A stretch of DNA of 11,902 nt. Source: Bugula neritina (Eukaryota; Animalia; Bryozoa). Positions 1 through 11,902 of the stretch are shown here, piece after piece. Every line of letters begins with the position of its first letter. Within the stretch, counting starts at the first letter, position 1. The DNA lies in NCBI GenBank assembly GCA_964035545.1, contig CAXIUT010000038.1, positions 1 through 11,902 on the forward strand, read 5' to 3'. Below the pieces are notes generated by a model that saw nothing but the letters and a program-made list of their open reading frames with translations, searched no databases and was not told the origin of the DNA. The translations under genes were made by a program, and so were the position numbers.

Positions 1-87
1 CCCAACCCCAACCCCAACCCCAACCCCAACCCCAACCCCAACCCCAACCCCAACCCCAACCCCAACCCCAACCCCAACCCCAACCCC
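1..87 (+). repeat. Left telomere, (CCCCAA)n
   Basis: Perfect C4A2 hexamer array from base 1 to 87, then AT-rich unique sequence. C4A2 is the Tetrahymena/oligohymenophorean-type ciliate telomere repeat. Confidence 0.98.
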
Positions 88-230
88 TTTCAAGCATGAA
101 TATGAATAAATAATCATATTGTTTTTAATTAATAGTCATATTTTTCATAATAGTCACTAGCTAATGATATAATTCTTATTAGTAATACAGAGGTATAAAT
201 GGTTATAATATTATAAAAATAACGACTACA

Positions 231-808
231 ATGCAACGACCAAAACCTCTCCACCTTTTCTCAAAAAGAGCCAACCCTTCTCTTCCCAAATCAGATAAAA
301 AATCAATAGAACTTCAACTATAATAAGCTCTTCAGTAAATACTCTCTCTCAAAGAATAGAATCACATCCTAAACTCCAAAGTACAACATTATGTATATTT
401 CCAACTATTCAGGAACAACTCAATCACAGCTGCCAATAGCAAGAACATCAAATAAGACAACTAACATAATAGCTTACCTTTAGACACTAACAACAAAATG
501 CCATGAACATCATCATCCAAAACTATTAATAAATTAACATACAACTCACAAATAAATTAAAACATCTGCAAGAACAAATTACCAATAAATCAGTACCTTC
601 CCTACCTACTACTGTTTAAAATACACCTGCAGATGAGTCATACTAGATAGATTTGCCATCTACTACTCGATTCAGAAATAGTAGAGGAAGGTCAGAATCA
701 AGAGACAAAAAATAAAACCATCAACTCACTCCCAAATCAAGAGTCAAATTCGACATCAACCAACTCCTCGATTAGTAAATTCCTATCAAAAAGAAAGTCT
801 TTTTCTGA
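231..808 (+). CDS. Hypothetical coiled-coil protein, 185 aa (exons 231-392, 413-808; TAA/TAG=Glu)
   Basis: MQRPKPLHLFSKR...SIELQLEEALQEILSLKEENHILNSKVQHY|EQLNHSCQEQEHQIRQLTEEL...KKKVFF-TGA. A 20-nt intron (393-412, GTATATTTCCAACTATTCAG) is needed to avoid a TGA near 503. Heptad-like L/E/Q pattern. Confidence 0.7.
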
Positions 809-945
809 TTGATAATCAATATGCCTCATATCTACTATATTACTCATCAGAAAGATAAATCAAATCTATTAACTGTTAAACCTTTCTCAATTGTTGTTTT
901 AGACTACTAGTTTTAAAAGGATTAAGTAAATAATAAGTTATAAAA

Positions 946-1149
946 TCAACAATGATGCCCATGATGTCCATGATGATGTCCGTGGTGATGTCCATGATGA
1001 TGTCCATGGTGACCATGATGATGACCATGATGACCTCCTCGATGCACATCAATAACAATGTTGCCTCCATGTCTATTGCCGTAGTGTCCATGATGATGTC
1101 CGTGATGATGTTCTCTATGCTCATAGCTGCTTTAACACATTGATCCCAT
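946..1149 (-). CDS. His/Gly-rich microprotein, 67 aa, 30 His; putative metal-binding protein
   Basis: MGSMCESSYEHREHHHGHHHGHYGNRHGGNIVIDVHRGGHHGHHHGHHGHHHGHHHGHHHGHHGHHC-TGA, with one in-frame TAA (1132-1134) read as Glu. Synonymous variation (CAT/CAC, GGA/GGT/GGG) preserves His and Gly in this frame. Confidence 0.85.
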
Positions 1150-1584
1150 TTAACTATTAAATATGATAGATATAAATCATAATTCTATTTATATTATCTT
1201 TGTCTATTCAATTCTTATCTTACAAACATCTATTCATCTCATAGATGTGAGCATATGAAATATCAAATACTTTTATAGAAATTTCTTTATGATTCCTTTA
1301 TTTAGATTTACTTTAATACTCAGTTCAAAACAATAGAAAACAATTAGAATCAATAAATAAAAATAAAATTATAAAAAATGGATAAATCAGAGTCAAAATT
1401 AACCTTAGACAACTTATTGATGCATAAATAAGCATTATTTTTTAATTCTAATTAATTTTATGATTATCAAAAATGCCTACATATCTAAACAATAACACAA
1501 TTAAGCAAATCAATAACCTTTCTCAATATGAGCGTTAAATATAACTTTTTGAAAGAAATAGCAAAATTGAATGCTTTAAAACTA

Positions 1585-1782
1585 TCATTCATGTCCATAA
1601 TGTCCATGCTGTCCTCTTTTATTTCCATTGAAATGCCCCTCATGTTTTTTCTGATATCTATGATTCTTTCCTTGATGATTGTTAATCACCACATTACTTC
1701 TATTTGTCCGTCTCTTTTGGTCATACTCATGTCCTTGATAACATTCTCTCAATTCATAGCTGCTCTCTTGTATCGCTCCCAT
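1585..1782 (-). CDS. Diverged paralogue of the His-rich microprotein, 65 aa
   Basis: MGAIQESSYELRECYQGHEYDQKRRTNRSNVVINNHQG...GQHGHYGHE-TGA. Shares MGxxxESSYExRE and N[IV]VI motifs and flanking non-coding motifs with 946-1149. Confidence 0.75.
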   Translation of the reverse strand: MGAIQESSYELRECYQGHEYDQKRRTNRSNVVINNHQGKNHRYQKKHEGHFNGNKRGQHGHYGHE

Positions 1783-1936
1783 CTAACAATTAAATGTGTT
1801 ATATCTAAGATCATCAACTATTATACTACTTTTATCTATTCAATTCTATTTCACAATATAAAATATTCAATTAATCATCTATTCACTTCAATCAAATAGA
1901 TATAATTAAGTTATAAAAAGCAATATGGTAAAACTA

Positions 1937-2926
1937 TCACTTATCATTTTTTATTTATATTTAGCTTTAAAAGTTAGTCATTTTCAATGAACTTTTCGAA
2001 GGATTTACTTTACTATCTTTGATAACTTATGGCTTTTTCCAATCCTGATACTTCTATATTTCCTAATCATCCATCATAAAAGAAAGTTCCTCTTTCTAAC
2101 ACATCAAACAACCTTAACACTTAATATCACAACTATTTATCCATTCTTTATTTTCTTCTTCATTCATAGATTGATAAACTGACGTCATTTTAACCGATCT
2201 CAGACATTTTTTACAATAGACAGTTAAAGGATTAAAATTTTGAGTCACACATAAAGGACAACTCATTTTTTTATGAATCCAAGTAACAAAACATTGAGGA
2301 TGATATAGATGTCCACATAGTGTTATCACTGTACAACTTTCAGTAAAACATATCGAACAGTTTTATTTAGCATCTATATGATAAGGAAATTGCTAATCCA
2401 TACGATAATCAGCTAAATTAACCACACTAACTGGAGGCTACTCCCTAATTCTCCTAGATACCACAGGATTATTGTTGCTCTACTTTACACATGAGTGAAT
2501 GATAGCTCCAATACAGATAACTATAGGAACAGAAAAAAATATAATTACTATTATGGTTCCAATACCAATCGGCTAAGTTTATTATTCACTTTTATCTGAA
2601 GACTTATTTTCAATTTTACATGAAGATGGTAAATCATTGTCTTTAAGCTTTTCGCAACAGTAAGATCTACAATAAGCCTATGAACGTGGTATCGACATTG
2701 AACAGTTTTAAAAATTTCTATCATCGTCAAAACATAAAACACAAGAATTAAATTTATGTCCTGTTGCATAAATACAGAAAGCCTAAGTCTTAGGCATCAA
2801 ACTTGACAAAATTATTAAACATAGACTGAGTTTTCCTAAGAAGAGCAAAGAGTTTTTTAGTAATGAGACTTAGAAGGTTTTATTTTAACTACATTTTTGG
2901 TTGACAGCAAAGAAAGACTTATACAT
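1937..2926 (-). CDS. Membrane-anchored RING-H2 E3 ubiquitin ligase-like protein, about 329 aa
   Basis: One uninterrupted frame with TAR=Glu. It has a hydrophobic signal-like segment (LSLCLIILSSLMPKTEA/FC), a small Cys-rich ectodomain, a TM helix (IGIGTIIVIIFFSVPIVICIGAII), and a RING-H2 (CSICFTESCTVITLCGHLYHPQCFVTWIHKKMSCPLC), then further CxxC pairs (CKKC, CEGCLMC). The start codon is uncertain. Confidence 0.85.
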
Positions 2927-3111
2927 TTATGTCAGTAATACCTATTAGAAGAATGTACAATTATTAATAATGTTAAAAATGTTATAAATTAAAATTAAAA
3001 ACTAACATAAAACCGTTATTAATCAATAATCTCCTTTTAATATGGTATGAATATTATGAATTGAATATTTGATTTGTTAGAATTATAATTATTATATTGA
3101 ATAATATGTCA

Positions 3112-3704
3112 TCAATAATAATAGTTCACTCTCATCTCATCTCCATAACCTTGATTTAATATGAACATATTAAAATTATTCACATAAGGCATCTGATTTA
3201 TCCCGTAATTCCATAATATGTTATTCATTGGAATAAAACTTTGCTCGTGACTCATGACTAGTTGTTAAATCTGTTCGATTAATCCCTCAGTACCTTGAAC
3301 TTCTTCAACTTATTAGTCTTAAACTTGCTAAACAACCTCTTAGTTCAGAGAGTTTATCTTTTTGATAGCTTCTACATACTTTTTTTTGTAGCCAGAAACT
3401 CCGATTTCATTTCGAATGTATTCCCGTATTCGAGTCAAGTATTTAAACTTAGCAAACATTTTTTGATGATGACTCCTACACTGGGCTGATGTCCTGCTTT
3501 CCACAAAGGCCGAGAGCTGATCATAAAACTGCATCTATCTATGTGTGATTTGAATTACCTCATTTTCTTTTTAGAAGTAATAAAATTTTTATGAATATCA
3601 ACAAAAAGTGTGTAAGAAAGATTCTCTTAGAATGACCAAGAACCTGCATTAGCCATTTAAGAATCCCTCTTAATTTATAGATTCTGTTGTTAGTGATTTT
3701 CCAT
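3112..3704 (-). CDS. Myb/SANT-like DNA-binding protein (SHAQKY-related, ciliate SHHQK type), about 190 aa
   Basis: NAGSWSFEENLSYTLFV...MR|EMQFYDQLSAFVESRTSAQCRSHHQKMF, joined across a 20-nt intron (3539-3558, GTAATTCAAATCACACATAG). An acidic region follows (NEEVVEQVEDEEVEE); it ends in TGA TGA. The start is uncertain. Confidence 0.88.
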
Positions 3705-4795
3705 CTTTTTAAAAATACAATTATAAAACTTGATTTCACTCAACATTAACCAGTTATTTTTTTAGAAATAATATTATCATGTGTTTTACTTCTTGATTAT
3801 GACCTTGTTTCACCTTCAGCCAGGAACAAAGCATTTATTTTTTAACAAGAATTTTGTTGTAATTTATTTATATATTTAAAGTTATTCTGAAGTTAGTTAG
3901 AACATTTTAAGATCAATATAAGATAAAAGGAGTTTATCAAACTTTTTAAAGGTGATTTTTTATTTTTTTATTGTTTTGACTGATTTATTTTTTTAATATT
4001 TTGAAAAAACAATAGTTCTCTTTAACGAAAACTATCTGTTTTACTTGTCAAACTTCTGACTAAGATTATTAAAGGATTTTAGAATTAATTATATTTTTTC
4101 ATTTCTTCAATTATTGAAACTTTATAAAATAGAAATAAATGACGCATAAAACTGCTACCTTTTTATTCTGAAGCTTGATAAGTAACTATTCATAAGAGTT
4201 CAATTATCTAAACATTCTTCTACTCTTCTAACAAGAAACTATAAGCTTATTTTATTGTTATCTAAGGGAAATAATTTTATTCTTGATGGTTTCTTTTGGT
4301 AGAATCCCCATCTTCATTAATCAATTAGATCTAATTTACTTCCAAATAACTTCGTTTTTCGAATATTGCTATTTTATTTGATATTTTCTCTTTTATCTCA
4401 CTTTATTTCATCATTTTAGAAAGAAGTCACCATCTATTTTTGAACTATATTGTATCGAAAATGATTGAAACAAGTCATCGCTGGTGTTCTAGATGAAAAG
4501 GATAACTATATATGATCTAAGAGATCAACTATATTAATTCTTTAGCTGATTCCAATATCTTATCTGGGGTTGATTATCTATATTTTAAATTGAATCAAAT
4601 AAAGTTAAAAGAAAATTATAAAAAAATCCTGTTTGACTTAAAATCAAGTAATTTCTTTTATTTCATAAGCTAAATATATATTTTTTAATATTCTTCAATT
4701 ATCTCATAAAATATTTGTCCATAAATCAATTATCTTATTAATAAAATAACTGAAAACTATTAAAAATAATAAAAATGAAATATTAAACTCTTTAT

Positions 4796-5500
4796 TCAGT
4801 CTATTTCTTTATTTTTCTGTAAAAACAAATGAACCTAACTAAACGCCTTTTTGATATCTTTAGATTTATCACGATTCATTATCCTACTTGAACTTTGATC
4901 TTTAATCCCATTTACTTACTCTTTTTTGTATCTTACCTCGCTCTACAACTCAGCTATCCTCTTCATAGTCATATTGCTTTATTTCTATCCCTTTGTTTAC
5001 ATTTATATCAGCCCTTCATCTAATTTTATGATCAAATTCTTTATCTATTGCTATTTTTTATACAAAAAAGACTACTATCTCGATAAATCCAACTTTCTTC
5101 GCTTCATCCTCTCGATCTAACCCTTCATCTTCTCGATATCTTCTTCTACAAGCTTTATTTCCTTTTTACTTTCTTTTTCTCTCTTCAAATCTCCATTTAC
5201 TCGTCTAACTTGACTATCTAATCCCTGTAACTCTCGATTATGCTTCTTTATTTTCATATTCTATATTTTTAACTGTTCTTATTTTCCTTATAACTCCATC
5301 TGTAAATGACTATTGATATCAATTGAATCTTTACTAGCAGCCAATAACATCTCATACTATTGTTTTATTTTGGCATAGTTGATATGATTTTGACTAAAGA
5401 CATTATCTCTTTCAAATATTTTTTAAGCCAATATTTCTATTGTTTTTTTGTTTTTAAGAGCCAATGATTTATACTTCCTCAACTGATCATTAAGTTCCAT
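4796..5500 (-). CDS. Hypothetical coiled-coil protein, 234 aa
   Basis: MELNDQLRKYKSLALKNKKTIEILAEKIFERD...KRIAELESEVRYKKEEV...QKNKEID-TGA. 235 codons with no internal TGA; E/K-rich heptads. Confidence 0.8.
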
Positions 5501-5529
5501 ATAATCAACTATAATTAAATAAAAAATAA

Positions 5530-7575
5530 TCAAGCAACCAGATAATCAATAATTTTATATATCACAAAACTCACAACCAAAACAACAAATATACTCTCAG
5601 ATTTTATACTTAACTCCTATCGCCATTCATCGTAATTCGTCCCCTTATCCACGGCTTCAACCAACTACATCTACTCATTAGGTTATTACAACTCCTCTAC
5701 CAAACTCATCGCTTGGAGATCAACACTACCAGTTGATGTTTTCTTTTTTATCAATTTAGGTATATTTTTACGACTCTATTACTCACAATACTTTATTATC
5801 TCAGGCTATTATTCCTACTATATCATCACCATGTATTTCTTGTTAAAGTTTTTAGAACTTTAGTCGTTACCATCCTGAGATATCTGTCTCTTTAAAGGAA
5901 TCTCCTTCATCTATACCTAACTTTCTAACTCTTTTGAAGGAAAGATCATTTTTTACTCATTTTATTTTTTATTTCGAGTACTTCTGCCCAAATAATCACT
6001 CTAACTATCTTTTTACTTGCTTCTCTTCAATTGATTTTCATTATTAATATCTTTTATTTTACTAAGAAGATCTTTCTGACTCTATCTCGTAGGTTTATTT
6101 TTCGACAGCATTATATTGTCTTTACTAGTTGAATTTTTATGAAAAATATCAATTTGACTATCTCTACTATTTTTAAGCACTCTTCCCTCTGATTTCATTA
6201 TTTTTTGGGGATTTTTACCGATATCAGTGGTATGGATATTAATGATATACTCCTTTTCTGGTTAATCTTTAAGATGTGATGATTTATCATTTTTAACTTG
6301 ACTATTTTTATGTTTAGACTGTTTATTAGGAGTCTAATCTTCTCTTTCTATTTCTTCATCCCAATCAATATCAATATCAACCAAAGATACAGGTGAAGGC
6401 TTATCTTCTTCCCTCATCTTCTATTCCTAAATATACTATTCATCCATACTATCTCTCACATCTTTAGTCTTAAAGGAATATTTATTACTCTCAATATCGA
6501 CTTGTTTGATAGTTTATGTAGATTTTTTAAAACTAGTAAAAATGTTATCAATTGGTATGTTATTATATGGAGATGATAATTAACTTTTATTGACTGTGTT
6601 GCCAGCTGATCCCTGAATCTATATTGTTTTATTCGAATTCAAACGATTCATAATATCAGTTTTTTATGAATATTCTGTTGGAATATAACTCTATCTAGAT
6701 AGATCTTCTTTAGGATTATATACCAGTCGACGTAAACTTTGTAGCTGTGATGATTTTAACTTTATTCCAAAGGTTTAGATGTTATCTCTAACTACATCAC
6801 TTGATTACATCAGTATTTTTATTATTTTAGATACAAATTTACCCTCATGAAGCATCTTTATCTACTTCCGAATACCCTTCAAAAATATAGAAAATTATTT
6901 ACTACTTTTCAATGCCAATATTCTTTCTTAACTTTTTATTCTATAACCAAAACAAATCAAGAGCAAAAGACCAAGAGAATACAACACAGCCTTAGGATAA
7001 TTTTTACGAATCAAGTCATATTAATTTCCAATATGTAGTAAAATTTAAGGAGCACAAAATTATGATTCCAACTTAACTACTTCTCCAGTTAGTCCCTCAA
7101 ACAAACTATGACTAAAAGGATACACCAATTTAAAAGAATAATTCCCATCTTTTTCCCTCATAATTAATTTATAAGGATTTAAAATCTTTATTGTACATCC
7201 TACTTCCTCACATATGCCAGCTATCGCCAATACATCTTATACCAATTGCAAACAAAACAACTCACTGATACACTCTTTATTTCCTTTTCCTTTCTAGATA
7301 TAATCTCCTAAAATTTAGAATCCTTCCACATCGCAAAAACAATAATACAAATTTTTCTTTTTGAAAAAGCCTTTGATATTTCCAAAGACTCCCTTTTCGA
7401 CCAAAGCATGCAACAAAGCCACCTGATGATGATTAGTAAATACACTTACATGATACTTCAAATTAGTTTGAGTACATGCATATAAATCAGAAGAATCCAA
7501 AGGCCGTAACTTTTTAAAACGAAATAAAGGACGTACTCCTGATTAGTAAGGCTGGAATTCATGATAGTTCAGCAT
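5530..7575 (-). CDS. Pseudokinase-domain protein with long low-complexity linker and C-terminal transmembrane anchor, about 681 aa
   Basis: 682 codons with no internal TGA. Kinase C-lobe motifs are FCAPEIL (APE, E=TAA at 7045-7047), KAVLYSLGLLL (subdomain IX-like) and SKIIKILMESSDVVR (XI-like). No GxGxxG, HRD or DFG. Ends ESIFVVLVVSFVIYKIIDYLVA-TGA. The start at 7575 is inferred; fusion with the upstream gene via an intron is not excluded. Confidence 0.75.
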
Positions 7576-7597
7576 TGTTATAATAAAGATAATGCTA

Positions 7598-8583
7598 TCA
7601 TAATCTGCAAGATATCAACTTCAAACATCCGATTTATATTGCATGCTATATCCACTTCTGACGATACTCCTAGTTGCCAGGATTCTCCTAAGATCGTTTC
7701 TTCATCTGCTCTAAACCATAGTATGATTTTATTGACTCTTTTACAACTCTTCTCAAACACTCAGCTCTCATCTAGGAATCAAGCATGATCGATTCGTTTA
7801 TCAAATGGTCAACATTTTGTTCCTAACTTATCTCATCTTCTGATACAAGGTTGATTGTTTATTTTTGGTTCTTTTTGCGATTTCGAGACAACTCCAGAAT
7901 CATATTGATTTCATCACTTTCAGAAGAAGCAAAACTTTGTTGCTGTATAATATGCTTCTAGAATGAGTTTTGAGGAACTTGCTTGTTTTATTAATTTTTA
8001 TCAATTCTGAGTGTTTCAGCCAAAATAATCAACTCTCGATAGACAGATCGATACTGTTCATCTGGAAACTGTTTGAATTGATCATTTCGATAGTACTTTT
8101 TCACAAAGTTCCATAGTATGGTATATTCACTTTTGACTGTTTTGAAGTTTTAGCCTTGCAGCATCAAAAGCACCAGTTGTTTGACTTTATTTGGACTGAA
8201 AAAGTTACTCTTCAAACTAGATATTCCTCGCTTTCTTACTATACAGCAAACACTCACTATGTTGTTAACCAGCCCTTCAATAATAGCCTTTTTCACTGGG
8301 AAAAGTTTTCTAAATGTATTAAAATTTACTTTTTGATATTAGAAGCAATAGCAGCAAAGTTAGTCTCCCACTTTTGAAATTCATTAAAAGCTTTTTCAAT
8401 TTATGCCTCATTTAACTTTTTTCTCATCATCTCAAAAGAATTAATCAGCTCATTTATCGATTGATGGACTCCAAAGATAGTAAAGATCTCCTCTTGAATC
8501 TCCTTCCATTGCTTTTCATCGTTTTCCTGACGAGACTTAAAGATGTAGTTGTCTACTCTGGTCTATATACACTACTCTTGCAT
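7598..8583 (-). CDS. Hypothetical helical protein, 321 aa (intron 8310-8329)
   Basis: MQEECIETRVDNYIFKSRQENDEKQWKEIQEEIF...ENPGNEEYRQKWIEHAIEIGCLKLISCRL-TGA. The 20-nt intron GTAAATTTTAATACATTTAG restores a long open frame. No family recognised. Confidence 0.75.
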
Positions 8584-8763
8584 TAATTTGATTATATGAT
8601 AGCGCAATTGATATCTTGTGATTTAAATTTAACATATTTATATATTAAGCTTCAATTTCATAAATTAAAAATCAATGTTCCCAATAAATTATTCTTTATT
8701 TTAATCATCAAAAAATAACCTAATAACAGCTTTATCAATCCCCCTAAATATAATAAAATTTGA

Positions 8764-9801
8764 ATGAAATCATCAAAACAACTAACTAAAAGAGGCATCT
8801 CTCCAGTCCTGCATAAGGTATCTTTCATTTGAAGAAGAGCAAAGAATCATCAATCTAAAGAAAAAAGAAAACTTCATCAACACATAATCAAATTTCATGC
8901 AAAACTAAATAATTTGAACCTTATGGAAAATCATAAAAAAAGAAAACTACTAACTATCTCAGAGATATCCTAAGACAACCTTAATCTAATAAATATAGAA
9001 TTGTTACAGAACCAGTCGAAGATAGAATCATGAGTATAGTCAGTTCATCATTTGCTCCATCCAGATCCAAAGGCAAAGTTTAACATGATCACTCTTCACA
9101 TAAAATGAGACCAGCCTCGATATCTAAAAGATAAAGTACTTGTGCTAATTGTCAATAGTATTATTTTTTTGTTAATATAGTTATGCTTCAGAAATAAGTA
9201 AACTTAAAAATGATTTGATAAAGATAGTCAATTAGAAATCACAATGGAAAAATGGATAAAAAAGTTTATAAGATATTAAAGTTTCATGGAGTTTAACCTC
9301 ATCAAAAACAAGATCGAAATCTGCACAAAATAAAGAAATAGATCGTTTAGTACTGGATGTAAAAAGACACTATCATGATCTCATGAAAGATATTTAAAGT
9401 CTAACAGAAATAGATTACCCTAAAATGCTTGCATTAAAGGTATAATTATCATCAAGTAGATCTTCAGATATAAACCTATTGATTAAAATCACCAGAGCAG
9501 TGAATAAACAGAACTTAAATCCCTTCTTGGACAACTAAGAAGTCATTATTAAGTAATAAAATATTAATTTTAGGGAAAATTGACATTCTGGGATCTATAA
9601 GACGAGTCAGAATAAAGTGACCATATCAAAGCGATTTTAAGAAATCTTAGAAGCCGTTTGAACCATTATCTTCGATAGAACTTATAGTTAAAAGCAAAGA
9701 AAGCAATTCTTTAGAAAGCATAACAGATGTCCTCATAATCTTAGTAGTATTTACGACTAATAATCGAGGATGTTTTAAAAAGTTATGACTCGAAATTATG
9801 A
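8764..9801 (+). CDS. Hypothetical protein with basic/Ser-rich N-terminus, CxxC and coiled coils, about 320 aa
   Basis: MKSSKQLTKRGISPVLHK|SKESS...CANCQY|YASEISKLKNDL...LRENLELKAKKAILEKAEQ...SYDSKL-TGA. Introns at 8818-8837 (20 nt), 9158-9180 (23 nt) and 9440-9459 (20 nt) are required; an in-frame 21-nt intron at 9553-9573 is possible. Confidence 0.7.
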
Positions 9802-9811
9802 TTTATCAACA

Positions 9812-10068
9812 TCAAAAGTTATTGTCTTCTTTCTAAGTAAGATCCCGAGTGATATCCCAACTTATCATCTTAGCACAGTCCTCTATTTACAATCATAAAT
9901 ACCCAAACACAATCTTTATTTCCAACCAACTTTTCCATCTCTTCCACTAGCCACATTGCAACTCGATAGACAGTATGTAAGTTCCCTCAAATCCATATCA
10001 ACGTTAGTTTGGATGATTTTGTCGAAATATGGGTTGTTAGTTCCATCTGATGCGAATACAGACTACAT
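9812..10068 (-). CDS. Twin CX3C protein, small Tim (Tim8/9/10/13)-like mitochondrial intermembrane-space protein, 78 aa
   Basis: MESVFASDGTNNPYFDKIIQTNVDMDLRELTYCLSSCNVASGRDGKVGWKERLCLEDCAKMISWDITRDLTEKEDNNF-TGA after removing a 20-nt intron (9883-9902). Pattern CX3C-X16-CX3C with the family-typical E-x-x-C-L-x-x-C. Confidence 0.75.
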
Positions 10069-10138
10069 CAATAATAATCACTATTATCCCACTAAATCTA
10101 ATAGCTTATCTCATATAGATTATTATCGATTGAAGCAG
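10069..10138. promoter_or_regulatory. Putative 70-nt bidirectional promoter/5' UTR region
   Basis: AT-rich gap between the divergent start codons of the small-Tim-like gene (10068, -) and Rab (10139, +). Inferred from position only. Confidence 0.45.
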
Positions 10139-10764
10139 ATGTCCAAAATAGAGGATTAATCATCTAACACAGCCACACAAATCAAACTCATAGCTGTCGG
10201 AGATTCAGGTGTAGGAAAAACTTCCATCCTCACACGCTTCACATATTAAAAATTCAATGACTACAGTTAACCCACTCTAGGAGCCGCATTTCTCACGAAA
10301 AAACATATTCTACCCAGCAATAAAACCCTAGAATTTCATGTACATGCTCTTTCATTCAGATTTGGGATACAGCAGGACAGTAAAAATATAGATCTATTGC
10401 TCCCATCTACTATCGATAAGCTAAAATTGCTCTTTGTGTCTATGATATCACCTCTCAAAGAAGTTACGAAGTAATGAAAAAATGGGTTGAAGAGCTTCAA
10501 GCAAATGGACCCAAAGATATGGTTCTGGCTGTAGTGGGAAACAAAATAGATAGATGTGATGAAGAATAAGTAGATTATGCTGCTGTCAAAGAGTATGCCT
10601 CAAGTCTAGGAGCTGTGTTGAAACTAGTCAGTGCTAAGGAAGGTAAAAATATATCTGATTTGTTCAATACAGTAGGATAAATGGTCATGAAAGGAAAAAT
10701 GACCCAGAATGGAACAGGAACTAAGGTCACAAAAAATCCACCCAAAAAGAAAGGATGTTGCTGA
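10139..10764 (+). CDS. Rab GTPase of the Rab5/Rab21/Rab22 (endosomal) group, 201 aa
   Basis: P-loop GDSGVGKT, switch I PTLGAAFLTK, WDTAGQEKYRSIAPIYYR, GNKID, VSAK, and C-terminal GCC prenylation motif before TGA. 20-nt intron at 10340-10359 (GTACATGCTCTTTCATTCAG). Confidence 0.96.
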
Positions 10765-10897
10765 TTAATTCCATCTTTAACATTATTATTCAAAGTATAT
10801 TATTTTTTAGTCAAAATAAATACTAGTTCCTTCAAAACTAGCAAAAAACTGATAAAAATCTCTTTAAAATAATAAACAAGAATAAAGCACATCCAAA

Positions 10898-11572
10898 TCA
10901 GATTTAAATATCCAAAGCCTGATCATATCTGACAGTAGGCATAACTGAACTCATAAACTTCAAAAAGATAATCAACGCTTGATGAGGTTTTATCTTTTTG
11001 CCTCTGGCCTTAGATTCCTCGATAAATCTTTTCATCACCTCAGAATGCTTACAAGGATGAATGGTTAACATCCTAATTCCCAAAAATGTACAATTCTATT
11101 CAGTTACCGTCTCATTCTGATACTCAGAGTATATATCTTCAAATATTTCTTTAGAAGTTAAAGGTTTACCATTATAGTCGTTTCCCTTTATCCATAAACG
11201 AGGAGTGTAGTAGTATTCGTCATAAGATACGTAAACATCGTATTTACGGAAGTCTTATTACTTCTCTTCTAAGTCTTCATCTCCACCGATCTCAACAAAT
11301 CCATACTCATCTTTGTTCTTGCTTTCAACTATCTGTTGCTTAGTTAGTCTTTTTATTCTTTGAGATGAAGTGGCAGGACAAGATAGATATTGCTTTTATG
11401 GGTTTTGTAGAAGTTTGCTTGGTTTGATTGCTTTATGCCATTTCCATCCGAAGTTTGTGAGTTGTTCTCCAGCTGTAAGGAACTGTTCCGGAGAAAGAAC
11501 TCCTTTACCTTCGAAGTCTTTATCTGATGGCGTAAACTTAGAGTTAACAAAGTTTTTGATTCCGTCAAACAT
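10898..11572 (-). CDS. ATG3: Autophagy E2-like enzyme ATG3, 224 aa, intronless
   Basis: GVLSPEQFLTAGEQL, KQYL, RKYDVYVSYDEYYYTPRLW, EIFEDI, catalytic TIHPCKHSEVMK, and the C-terminal FLKFMSSVMPT motif are all ATG3 hallmarks. Confidence 0.96.
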
Positions 11573-11626
11573 GAGATATAAATTATTATTAAAAAGTAAA
11601 AAAAGATGAATATAAACTATCATACA

Positions 11627-11757
11627 GGGGTTGGGGTTGGGGTTGGGGTTGGGGTTGGGGTTGGGGTTGGGGTTGGGGTTGGGGTTGGGGTTGGGGTTGG
11701 GGTTGGGGTTGGGGTTGGGGTTGGGGTTGGGGTTGGGGTTGGGGTTGGGGTTGGGTT
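11627..11757 (+). repeat. Internal (GGGGTT)n telomeric tract
   Basis: 21 perfect G4T2 units plus a final GGGTT, starting 54 nt upstream of the ATG3 start codon. Confidence 0.95.
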
Positions 11758-11821
11758 GTGATTCATCTTATTAATTCATTTAATTAAAATCTACTATATC
11801 ATAACTATGTCAAAACAAGAA

Positions 11822-11902
11822 GGGGTTGGGGTTGGGGTTGGGGTTGGGGTTGGGGTTGGGGTTGGGGTTGGGGTTGGGGTTGGGGTTGGGGTTGGGGTTG
11901 GG
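11822..11902 (+). repeat. Terminal right telomere, (GGGGTT)n
   Basis: Perfect G4T2 array running to the end of the window. Confidence 0.97.

What the first reader, a model, noticed from the sequence alone, without database searches (positions are those of the whole stretch)
231..11572. Non-standard genetic code: TAA and TAG both read as glutamate, TGA the only stop
Seen for TAA: it occupies conserved Glu positions in unrelated proteins. These are Rab WDTAGQ[TAA]KY (10381-10383), kinase AP[TAA] (7045-7047), small-Tim [TAA]xxCLxxC (9916-9918) and Myb WSF[TAA]E (3627-3629). It also aligns with GAG in the neighbouring paralogue (1132-1134 vs MGAIQ-E-SSYE). Seen for TAG: ATG3 TVTE[TAG] (11096-11098, the usually conserved TVTxE Glu), IAEL[TAG], LKE[TAG]N and acidic runs such as TAG TAG GAA TAA TAG. 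Gln uses CAA/CAG, Trp uses TGG, and all 12 genes end in TGA. Established: most reassigning ciliates use TAR=Gln; TAR=Glu is the rarer peritrich code (table 30). Inference: the source is a peritrich or an independent origin of this code. TAG support is weaker than TAA support.
Basis: partly seen in the sequence, partly recalled or inferred. Interest (0 to 1): 0.8.

Follow-up and report, generated by a model that had tools for sequence, protein, structure and literature searches.

The report
TAA and TAG encode glutamate here
On this small ciliate chromosome TAA and TAG stand for glutamate and only TGA ends genes; this rare code is already described (the peritrich code, NCBI table 30), so the result matters mainly for translating this genome correctly.

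Summary
The window is a whole ciliate macronuclear chromosome with C4A2/G4T2 telomeres. It carries 11 genes that have orthologues in relatives.

I fetched syntenic contigs from two related lineages (35-80% protein identity) and compared 4,927 aligned codon pairs.
- TAA pairs with Glu codons in 89 of 197 informative cases. The next partners are Asp 23 and Gln 17.
- TAG pairs with Glu codons in 55 of 121 cases. The next partner is Asp 21.
- These profiles match those of GAA and GAG. Glu beats every other amino acid by more than 58 log-likelihood units.
- In Rab and ATG3 (about 80% identity) every TAA or TAG faces GAA, GAG, TAA or TAG, apart from one N-terminal gap.
- Solved structures have Glu at DTAGQ[TAA] in Rab5 and at TVTx[TAG] in ATG3.
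- GAR plus TAR is constant (10.4-11.3% of codons) across the three lineages, and Gln codons are stable.
- TGA is absent from 2,382 aligned window codons (31.7 expected) and closes each of the 11 genes.

This is NCBI table 30, known from peritrichs, so the code is not new. Other first readers noted the same code on other pieces of this genome. I could not test whether the organism is a peritrich, and no tRNA or eRF1 gene lies in the window.

The parts
1..87 (.). Left telomere, (CCCCAA)n
   Evidence: TRF: period 6, 14.5 copies, 100% match
231..506 (+). It is not supported. The same frame stays open for 507-809 after the TGA.
   Evidence: ORF list; no orthologue in relatives; no clear coding signal
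946..1149 (-). His-rich protein 1 (MGSMC[TAA]SSYE...). TAA at 1132-1134 faces GAG of the paralogue.
1585..1782 (-). His-rich paralogue (MGAIQESSYE...), with GAG at 1765-1767
1937..3022 (-). RING-finger protein ORF: 13 TAA and 11 TAG in frame, TGA stop
   Evidence: Pfam zf-RING_2 E=8e-9 on a stop-free piece; orthologues at 40-42% identity
3112..3776 (-). Myb/SANT-like gene in two frames; candidate 20-nt intron at 3539-3558. WSF[TAA]E is at 3627-3629.
   Evidence: At 3627 the relative L007 has CAA.
4796..5545 (-). Coiled-coil protein: 7 TAA and 10 TAG in frame
   Evidence: The alignment ends exactly at the TGA in the window and in L007.
5530..7575 (-).
   Evidence: no Pfam or PDB kinase match
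7598..8769 (-). Gene G9, in two frames, function unknown
   Evidence: Strain variant TAA>GAA at 7861.
8764..9801 (+). Gene G10, in several frames joined by tiny introns. The 3' exon is 63-76% identical to the relatives.
9812..10068 (-). Small-Tim-like gene with a 20-nt intron at 9883-9902. Codon 2 is TAG (GAA in L007). [TAA]RLCLEDC is at 9916-9918.
   Evidence: The intron has the same position and length in both relatives. There is no Pfam match.
10139..10764 (+). Rab5-like GTPase: exons 10139-10339 and 10360-10764, 20-nt intron, 7 in-frame TAA, ends ...KKKGCC-TGA
10381..10383 (+). TAA at the Glu of the DTAGQE motif
   Evidence: Rab5A/B chains have E here. Both relatives have TAG.
10898..11572 (-). 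ATG3 (autophagy E2-like enzyme): 4 TAA and 1 TAG in frame, TGA stop
   Evidence: Pfam Autophagy_act_C E=3e-15 and 8e-14 on pieces; orthologues at 79-80% identity
11096..11098 (-). TAG at the Glu of the ATG3 motif TVTxE
   Evidence: Both relatives have a Glu codon. Human and Arabidopsis ATG3 chains have E.
11627..11755 (.). Right telomere, (GGGGTT)n
11822..11902 (.). Second (GGGGTT)n block after 66 nt of unique sequence
   Evidence: probably an assembly join

Best explanation
The window is a complete macronuclear chromosome of a ciliate. Its nuclear code reads both UAA and UAG as glutamate and keeps UGA as the only terminator. This is the peritrich nuclear code, NCBI table 30.

Shown here: what the codons mean, and that UGA is the terminator.

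Inferred from what is established for such codes, not shown here: the mechanism. That would be tRNA-Glu-derived suppressor tRNAs with UUA and CUA anticodons, plus an eRF1 that recognises only UGA.

The source is most likely a sessilid peritrich or a close relative of that group. The same code is used by at least two related lineages found in environmental assemblies.
For: 1. Orthologue codon pairs, from two relatives fetched through:
- TAA partners are E 89, D 23, Q 17, N 9, K 8 of 197.
- TAG partners are E 55, D 21, L 8, K 6, Q 5 of 121.
- Log-likelihood puts E ahead of D by 122 (TAA) and 59 (TAG), and ahead of Q by 176 and 135.
- The same procedure recovers the standard meaning of 11 of 12 control codons.
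2. Reciprocal view: 12.6-15.9% of window Glu codons face TAR in a relative. The figure is 2.4-3.3% for Gln codons, 0-1.9% for Lys and 0% for Tyr.
3. In alignments of at least 60% identity, TAA faces E 31, TAG 6, TAA 2, D 2, K 1, Q 1, G 1. TAG faces E 12, TAA 6, TAG 4, D 1.
4. Deep homology: DTAGQ[TAA]KY aligns with Rab5 DTAGQERY. TVTE[TAG] aligns with ATG3 TVTIE, via the relative's GAR codon.
5. Composition: GAR+TAR is 11.3%, 10.4% and 11.3% of codons in the three lineages, although TAR alone ranges from 2.4 to 5.6%. Gln codons stay at 3.5-4.1%.
6. Strain variants: TAA>GAA at 7861, and TAA>TAG at 5686 and 10680, among mostly synonymous changes.
7. TGA: 0 observed against 31.7 expected in aligned codons. 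Alignments stop at TGA. Rab ends with the prenylation motif CC immediately before TGA.
8. Literature: UAR=Glu is described for Campanella, Carchesium and Peritrichia as a whole (PMC10553269, PMC10089648).
Against: - No tRNA gene and no eRF1 gene lie in the window or in the fetched relatives' loci, so the mechanism is inferred.
- No RNA run holds the window and there are no peptide data, so translation itself is not observed.
- One TAG (6334-6336) faces TGG in both relatives. TAG shows a small excess of Leu partners and TAA a non-significant excess of Gln partners.
- Peritrich identity is untested.
- The evidence covers 11 genes of one chromosome, not the genome.
Confidence: 0.93

Rival explanations
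1. Standard ciliate code (table 6): TAA and TAG read as glutamine, as in Tetrahymena and Paramecium, which share the C4A2 telomere repeat.
For: The telomere type. A few sites face Gln codons in a relative, for example 3627, 9916, 4943, 5357 and 9257.
Against: - Gln partners are only 8.6% for TAA and 4.1% for TAG, no more than for GAA and GAG.
- Log-likelihood is 176 and 135 units worse than for Glu.
- Gln codon share is stable while GAR trades off with TAR.
- The DTAGQE and TVTxE sites are Glu.
Confidence: 0.01
2. Split code as in Oligohymenophorea sp. PL0344 (UAA=Lys, UAG=Glu), or another code in which TAA and TAG differ.
For: This code exists in the same ciliate class (PMC10553269).
Against: - TAA partners are Lys in only 8 of 197 cases, against Glu in 89.
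- TAA and TAG have equal Glu shares.
- TAA and TAG replace each other at conserved sites, including the DTAGQE Glu, and in strain variants.
Confidence: 0.01
3. Context-dependent or ambiguous code: TAR is mostly Glu but sometimes a stop or another residue, and/or TGA is sometimes read as Trp or Sec. Other first readers suggested this for other pieces of the genome.
For: - An in-frame TGA (504-506) separates two ORFs of one frame in the unsupported first gene.
- One TAG faces TGG in both relatives, and there are small Leu and Gln partner excesses.
- Unchecked notes s1-435657, s1-435656 and s1-434031.
Against: - No orthologue-supported gene here needs a TGA read-through or ends at TAR.
- ATG3's penultimate TAA faces GAA in a relative whose protein has the same C-terminal length.
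- The partner excesses are one-nucleotide neighbours of the codons, and the sites are counted once per relative.
Confidence: 0.05
4. The standard code applies and the 'genes' are pseudogenes or non-coding DNA riddled with stops.
For: Nothing beyond the raw presence of TAA and TAG in frame.
Against: - Orthologues are conserved at up to 80% identity over whole genes in two other lineages.
- Strain differences are mostly synonymous.
- TGA is fully avoided in frame.
- A 20-nt intron is conserved in three lineages.
Confidence: 0.005

Closest known systems
Peritrich nuclear code (NCBI translation table 30): UAA and UAG = Glu, UGA = stop. Described for Vorticella/Opisthonecta, Campanella umbellaria and Carchesium polypinum.
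   Same: All three codon meanings tested here agree: TAA=Glu, TAG=Glu and TGA as terminator.
   Different: Nothing differs at the level of the code. Whether the organism belongs to Peritrichia, and whether it has the matching tRNAs and eRF1, was not testable from this window.
Ciliate nuclear code (table 6): UAR = Gln (Tetrahymena, Paramecium, Oxytricha)
   Same: The same two codons are reassigned together, UGA is the sole stop, and the telomere repeat is C4A2 as in Tetrahymena.
   Different: The amino acid is Glu, not Gln.
Oligohymenophorea sp. PL0344 code: UAA = Lys, UAG = Glu (PMC10553269)
   Same: UAG = Glu and UGA is the stop; the class is probably the same.
   Different: Here UAA is Glu, not Lys, and the two codons are interchangeable.
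Blastocrithidia nuclear code (table 31): UAR = Glu and also stop, UGA = Trp
   Same: UAR is read as Glu.
   Different: Here UGA terminates all supported genes and never occurs in frame, and TAR never terminates. The organism is a ciliate, not a trypanosomatid.

Membership tests
Peritrich nuclear code (table 30) | UAA decoded as glutamate | tested here: met
   89 of 197 orthologue partners are Glu codons and E is the best fit by 122 log units. Rab5 has E at DTAGQ[TAA]. Strain variant TAA>GAA.
Peritrich nuclear code (table 30) | UAG decoded as glutamate | tested here: met
   55 of 121 partners are Glu codons and E is the best fit by 59 log units. The ATG3 TVTxE site is Glu. TAG and TAA exchange at conserved Glu sites.
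Peritrich nuclear code (table 30) | UGA is the only termination codon | tested here: met
   0 TGA against 31.7 expected in 2,382 aligned codons. All 11 supported genes end at TGA, with alignments reaching the stop. This holds for this chromosome only.
Peritrich nuclear code (table 30) | Suppressor tRNAs of Glu type with UUA and CUA anticodons | not testable with these tools
   No tRNA gene in the window or in 8 relatives' loci. Unchecked notes report such tRNAs elsewhere in this genome.
Peritrich nuclear code (table 30) | eRF1 restricted to UGA | not tested
   eRF1 is not in the window. An unchecked note reports a GTS loop without Thr. [quoted passage not shown]
Peritrich nuclear code (table 30) | Organism belongs to Peritrichia | not testable with these tools
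   No rRNA or marker gene in the window. Run and organism names are coded. Sample accessions were not found in papers.
Ciliate code (table 6) | UAR decoded as glutamine | tested here: not met
   Gln partners are 8.6% (TAA) and 4.1% (TAG), as for GAR. Log-likelihood is 176 and 135 units worse than Glu.
PL0344 split code | UAA decoded as lysine | tested here: not met
   Lys partners are 8 of 197.
Mesodinium code (table 29) | UAR decoded as tyrosine | tested here: not met
   Tyr partner 1 of 179 for TAA and 0 for TAG. No window Tyr codon faces TAR.
Blastocrithidia / Condylostoma-type codes | UGA read as Trp inside genes, stops context-dependent | tested here: not met
   No in-frame TGA in any orthologue-supported gene, and Trp is encoded by TGG. 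The only in-frame TGA (504-506) lies in an unsupported ORF.

The most novel reading that the evidence does not exclude
The organism is not a peritrich. On that reading, UAR=Glu arose a second time in a clade of ciliates with C4A2 telomeres, multi-gene minichromosomes of 6-12 kb and uniform 20-nt introns. A weaker version: decoding is not fully uniform, with occasional other readings of UAG/UAA or sense use of UGA elsewhere in the genome.
Probability: 0.1. Interest if true: 0.7.

Novelty: already known. Interest (0 to 1): 0.3.

Why it matters
Practical value: every gene of this genome, and of its environmental relatives, is truncated or invisible under the standard, bacterial or table-6 codes. 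Public gene calls on the relatives' contigs are broken into 30-230-residue fragments. Translating with table 30 restores full proteins and puts Glu rather than Gln at about 5.6% of residues.

Scientific value is modest, because the code is a described one. It would rise only if the organism fell outside Peritrichia, or if the ambiguity suggested on other pieces of the genome proved real.

Tried and rejected
- tRNA and Rfam scans of the window and tRNA scans of the relatives' loci found nothing.
- Pfam on stop-free pieces confirmed ATG3, Ras and RING. It did not confirm the 'kinase', the small Tim or the Myb.
- Typed segments of 45 residues or fewer, with X at TAR codons, did not recover a kinase (PDB) or zf-Tim10_DDP (Pfam).
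- Laying contigs of four runs gave only 98-99% identical strains, hence few informative codon changes: three at TAR codons. 26 further differences were not listed.
- A first scan for in-frame TGA across all six frames was swamped by wrong-frame alignments and I discarded it.
- A codon-usage coding-potential scan could not decide the frame in 88-945 or 3777-4795. tblastx found no orthologue there.
- Attempts to name the organism failed. Sample accessions are absent from the paper library, run names are coded, and the ESM Atlas gave only chance hits.
- I did not use the large HMMER search or structure prediction, because the orthologue test settled the question.
Full report
WHAT THE WINDOW IS. 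The 11,902 bases begin with (CCCCAA)n at 1-87 and carry (GGGGTT)n at 11627-11755. After 66 unique bases there is a second (GGGGTT)n block that runs to the end. G+C is 24-34%. This is a telomere-to-telomere ciliate macronuclear chromosome. It holds no tRNA gene and no Rfam family.

THE OBSERVATION. With TGA as the only stop, long ORFs appear on both strands. The longest has 694 codons with 22 TAA and 19 TAG in frame. Pfam on stop-free pieces confirms three families:
- ATG3 (Autophagy_act_C, E=3e-15 and 8e-14). The two pieces are contiguous in the profile, leaving one position for the TAG.
- Ras/Rab.
- A RING finger.

RELATIVES. The tools here take no protein read through a stop by reference. 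I therefore searched a 75-residue stop-free piece of the large conserved gene. It found four fragments at 67-72% identity. Their contigs come from environmental assemblies and represent two lineages: L001/L013, on a 32.8-kb contig, and L007/L015, on a 44.9-kb contig. Both carry the window's genes in the same order: His-rich, RING, Myb-like, coiled-coil, large conserved protein, G9, G10, Tim-like, Rab and ATG3. Protein identity is 34-81%. Public gene calls on these contigs are short fragments, as expected if TAA and TAG were taken for stops.

THE CODON TEST.
- Method. I translated TGA-delimited ORFs with X at TAA and TAG, so these codons could not bias the alignment. I kept the best-scoring frame for each region and read off the codon pairs.
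- Main tally, over 4,927 aligned pairs. TAA in either species faces E 89, D 23, Q 17, N 9, K 8 of 197. TAG faces E 55, D 21, L 8, K 6, Q 5 of 121.
- Likelihood. Using substitution frequencies taken from the same alignments, Glu is the best meaning for both codons. It leads Asp by 122 (TAA) and 59 (TAG) log units, and leads Gln by 176 and 135.
- Controls. The same procedure returns the standard amino acid for 11 of 12 control codons. The exception, TGG, is an artefact of excluding identical codons for an amino acid that has only one codon.
- TAA against TAG. Their Glu shares are equal, 45.2% and 45.5%.
- Per site. 34 of 76 aligned window TAA sites and 32 of 56 TAG sites have Glu in at least one relative. 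Gln appears at 11 and 3 sites, Lys at 6 and 3.
- Reciprocal view. 12.6-15.9% of window Glu codons face TAR in a relative. The figure is 2.4-3.3% for Gln codons, 0-1.9% for Lys and 0% for Tyr.
- High-identity alignments (60% or more). TAA faces E 31, TAG 6, TAA 2, D 2, K 1, Q 1, G 1. TAG faces E 12, TAA 6, TAG 4, D 1.

BEST-CONSERVED GENES. In Rab and ATG3 every TAR of any of the three species faces GAA, GAG, TAA or TAG, apart from one N-terminal gap. Examples are RFTY[TAA]KF/E, DYS[TAA]PT/E, YYR[TAA]A/E, NP[TAA]KQYL/E, EEK[TAA][TAA]DF/EE and TVTE[TAG]/E. In the other direction, LSP[E]QF faces TAA in both relatives.

DEEP HOMOLOGY. A typed 42-residue Rab segment with X at the two TAA codons aligns to Rab5A/B as IWDTAGQ-E-RY, so the first TAA sits on the invariant Glu of switch II. 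The second sits on Gly of YYRGA in Rab5, but on Glu codons in both relatives. The relative's stop-free ATG3 piece TVTEE... aligns to human and Arabidopsis ATG3 as TVTIE, so the window's TAG sits on that Glu.

COMPOSITION. In aligned codons GAR+TAR is 11.3% in the window, 10.4% in L001 and 11.3% in L007. TAR alone is 5.6%, 2.4% and 4.1%. Gln codons stay at 3.5-4.1%. TAR therefore trades off against GAR, not against CAR.

STRAIN VARIANTS. Contigs of four runs under three organism labels are 98-99% identical to the window. Of the 40 listed differences, about two thirds are synonymous third-position changes in the frames used here. Three fall on TAR codons: TAA>GAA at 7861, and TAA>TAG at 5686 and 10680. 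An apparent TAA>CAA at 8787 is in the wrong frame. In the frame of the ATG at 8764 it is ACT>ACC.

TGA. There are no TGA codons among 2,382 aligned window codons, against 31.7 expected. The alignments reach within 0-3 codons of the closing TGA in both species for the large protein, the coiled-coil protein, G9, G10 and the Myb-like gene. Rab ends ...KKKGCC-TGA in all three species. ATG3's penultimate TAA faces GAA in a relative whose protein has the same length, so it is sense, not stop. Frame changes inside genes are explained by tiny GT..AG introns:
- 20 nt in Rab (10340-10359).
- 20 nt in the Tim-like gene (9883-9902), at the same place and of the same length in both relatives. Its removal restores the twin CX3C motif.
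- 20-nt candidates in the Myb-like gene and G10.

- The 'kinase' is not recognised by Pfam or PDB sequence searches. Its AP[TAA] site is TAR in both relatives, so it is uninformative.
- The Tim-like product has no Pfam match. Its TAA faces CAA in one relative and GAA in the other.
- The Myb WSF[TAA]E site faces CAA in L007.
- Only 11 genes are supported. The first gene (ATG 231) and the stretch 3777-4795 have no orthologue and no clear coding signal.

RESIDUAL ODDITIES. TAG at 6334-6336 faces TGG in both relatives. TAG has a small excess of Leu partners (8/121 against 7/529 for GAR). TAA has a non-significant excess of Gln partners (p=0.08). All of these are one-nucleotide neighbours of the codons, and each site is counted once per relative. 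I read them as mutational neighbourhood, not ambiguous decoding, but I cannot exclude the latter.

COMPARISON WITH WHAT IS KNOWN. UAR=Glu with UGA as the stop is the peritrich code (NCBI table 30, from my own knowledge). [quoted passage not shown] It also describes the PL0344 code (UAA=Lys, UAG=Glu), which is excluded here. PMC10089648 cites Glu in several Sessilida and a deletion in the eRF1 GTS motif of Carchesium. An unchecked note on this genome reports a GTS loop lacking Thr. That is a lead towards a peritrich, not a test. Other first readers noted the same code on other pieces of this genome. Two suggested TGA=Trp and one suggested Gln-like behaviour. This window gives no support for either suggestion.

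LIMITS. The mechanism (suppressor tRNAs, eRF1) and the taxon were not testable. No RNA run holds the window. The evidence covers one chromosome. Three calls (34, 48, 49) used typed segments of 45 residues or fewer with X at TAR codons.

VERDICT. The code is already known, so interest is low to moderate.

Noticed in passing
window 10340-10359, 9883-9902, 3539-3558, 8818-8837; L001 and L007 Tim-like genes: Introns of exactly 20 nt (GT..AG). The Tim-like intron has the same position and length in three lineages, and removing it restores a twin CX3C motif. Frame changes in G9, G10 and the Myb-like gene look like such introns rather than ribosomal frameshifts.
   Followed up: partly
window 11627-11902: There are two G4T2 telomere blocks separated by 66 nt of unique AT-rich sequence. 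This is probably two telomere-bearing molecules joined in assembly, or a very small fragment.
   Followed up: no
window 11572-11627 vs L013 11885 onward and L015 upstream of 7986; window 7600 vs L001 5417-9983: Chromosome ends and gene content differ between lineages. The window has a telomere 55 nt from the ATG3 start codon, whereas the relatives' contigs continue with PC4, kinase and PAE genes. The relatives also have about 4.5 kb (a BEACH-domain gene and others) between G9 and the large conserved gene, which abut in the window.
   Followed up: partly
window 6334-6336 (- strand): This TAG faces TGG (Trp) in both relatives, in an acidic linker of the large conserved protein. It is the only such site.
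   Followed up: partly
window 168-809 (+ strand): Two ORFs of one frame (168-503 and 507-809) are separated by a single TGA at 504-506. There is no orthologue and no clear coding signal, so it cannot be told whether this is a read-through, two genes or non-coding DNA.
   Followed up: partly
whole window (sequencing runs X1-X22): Copies 98-99% identical occur in DNA runs under three different organism labels. Nine runs guessed to be RNA, under the best holder's species label, hold none of the window's words. The label may name a host or culture partner rather than the ciliate.
   Followed up: no
window 949-1176 and 1588-1839 (- strand): These are a tandem pair of small His/Gly-rich proteins (HHHGHHHG repeats), conserved in both relatives. 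Each start codon is preceded by an in-frame TAA or TAG.
   Followed up: no
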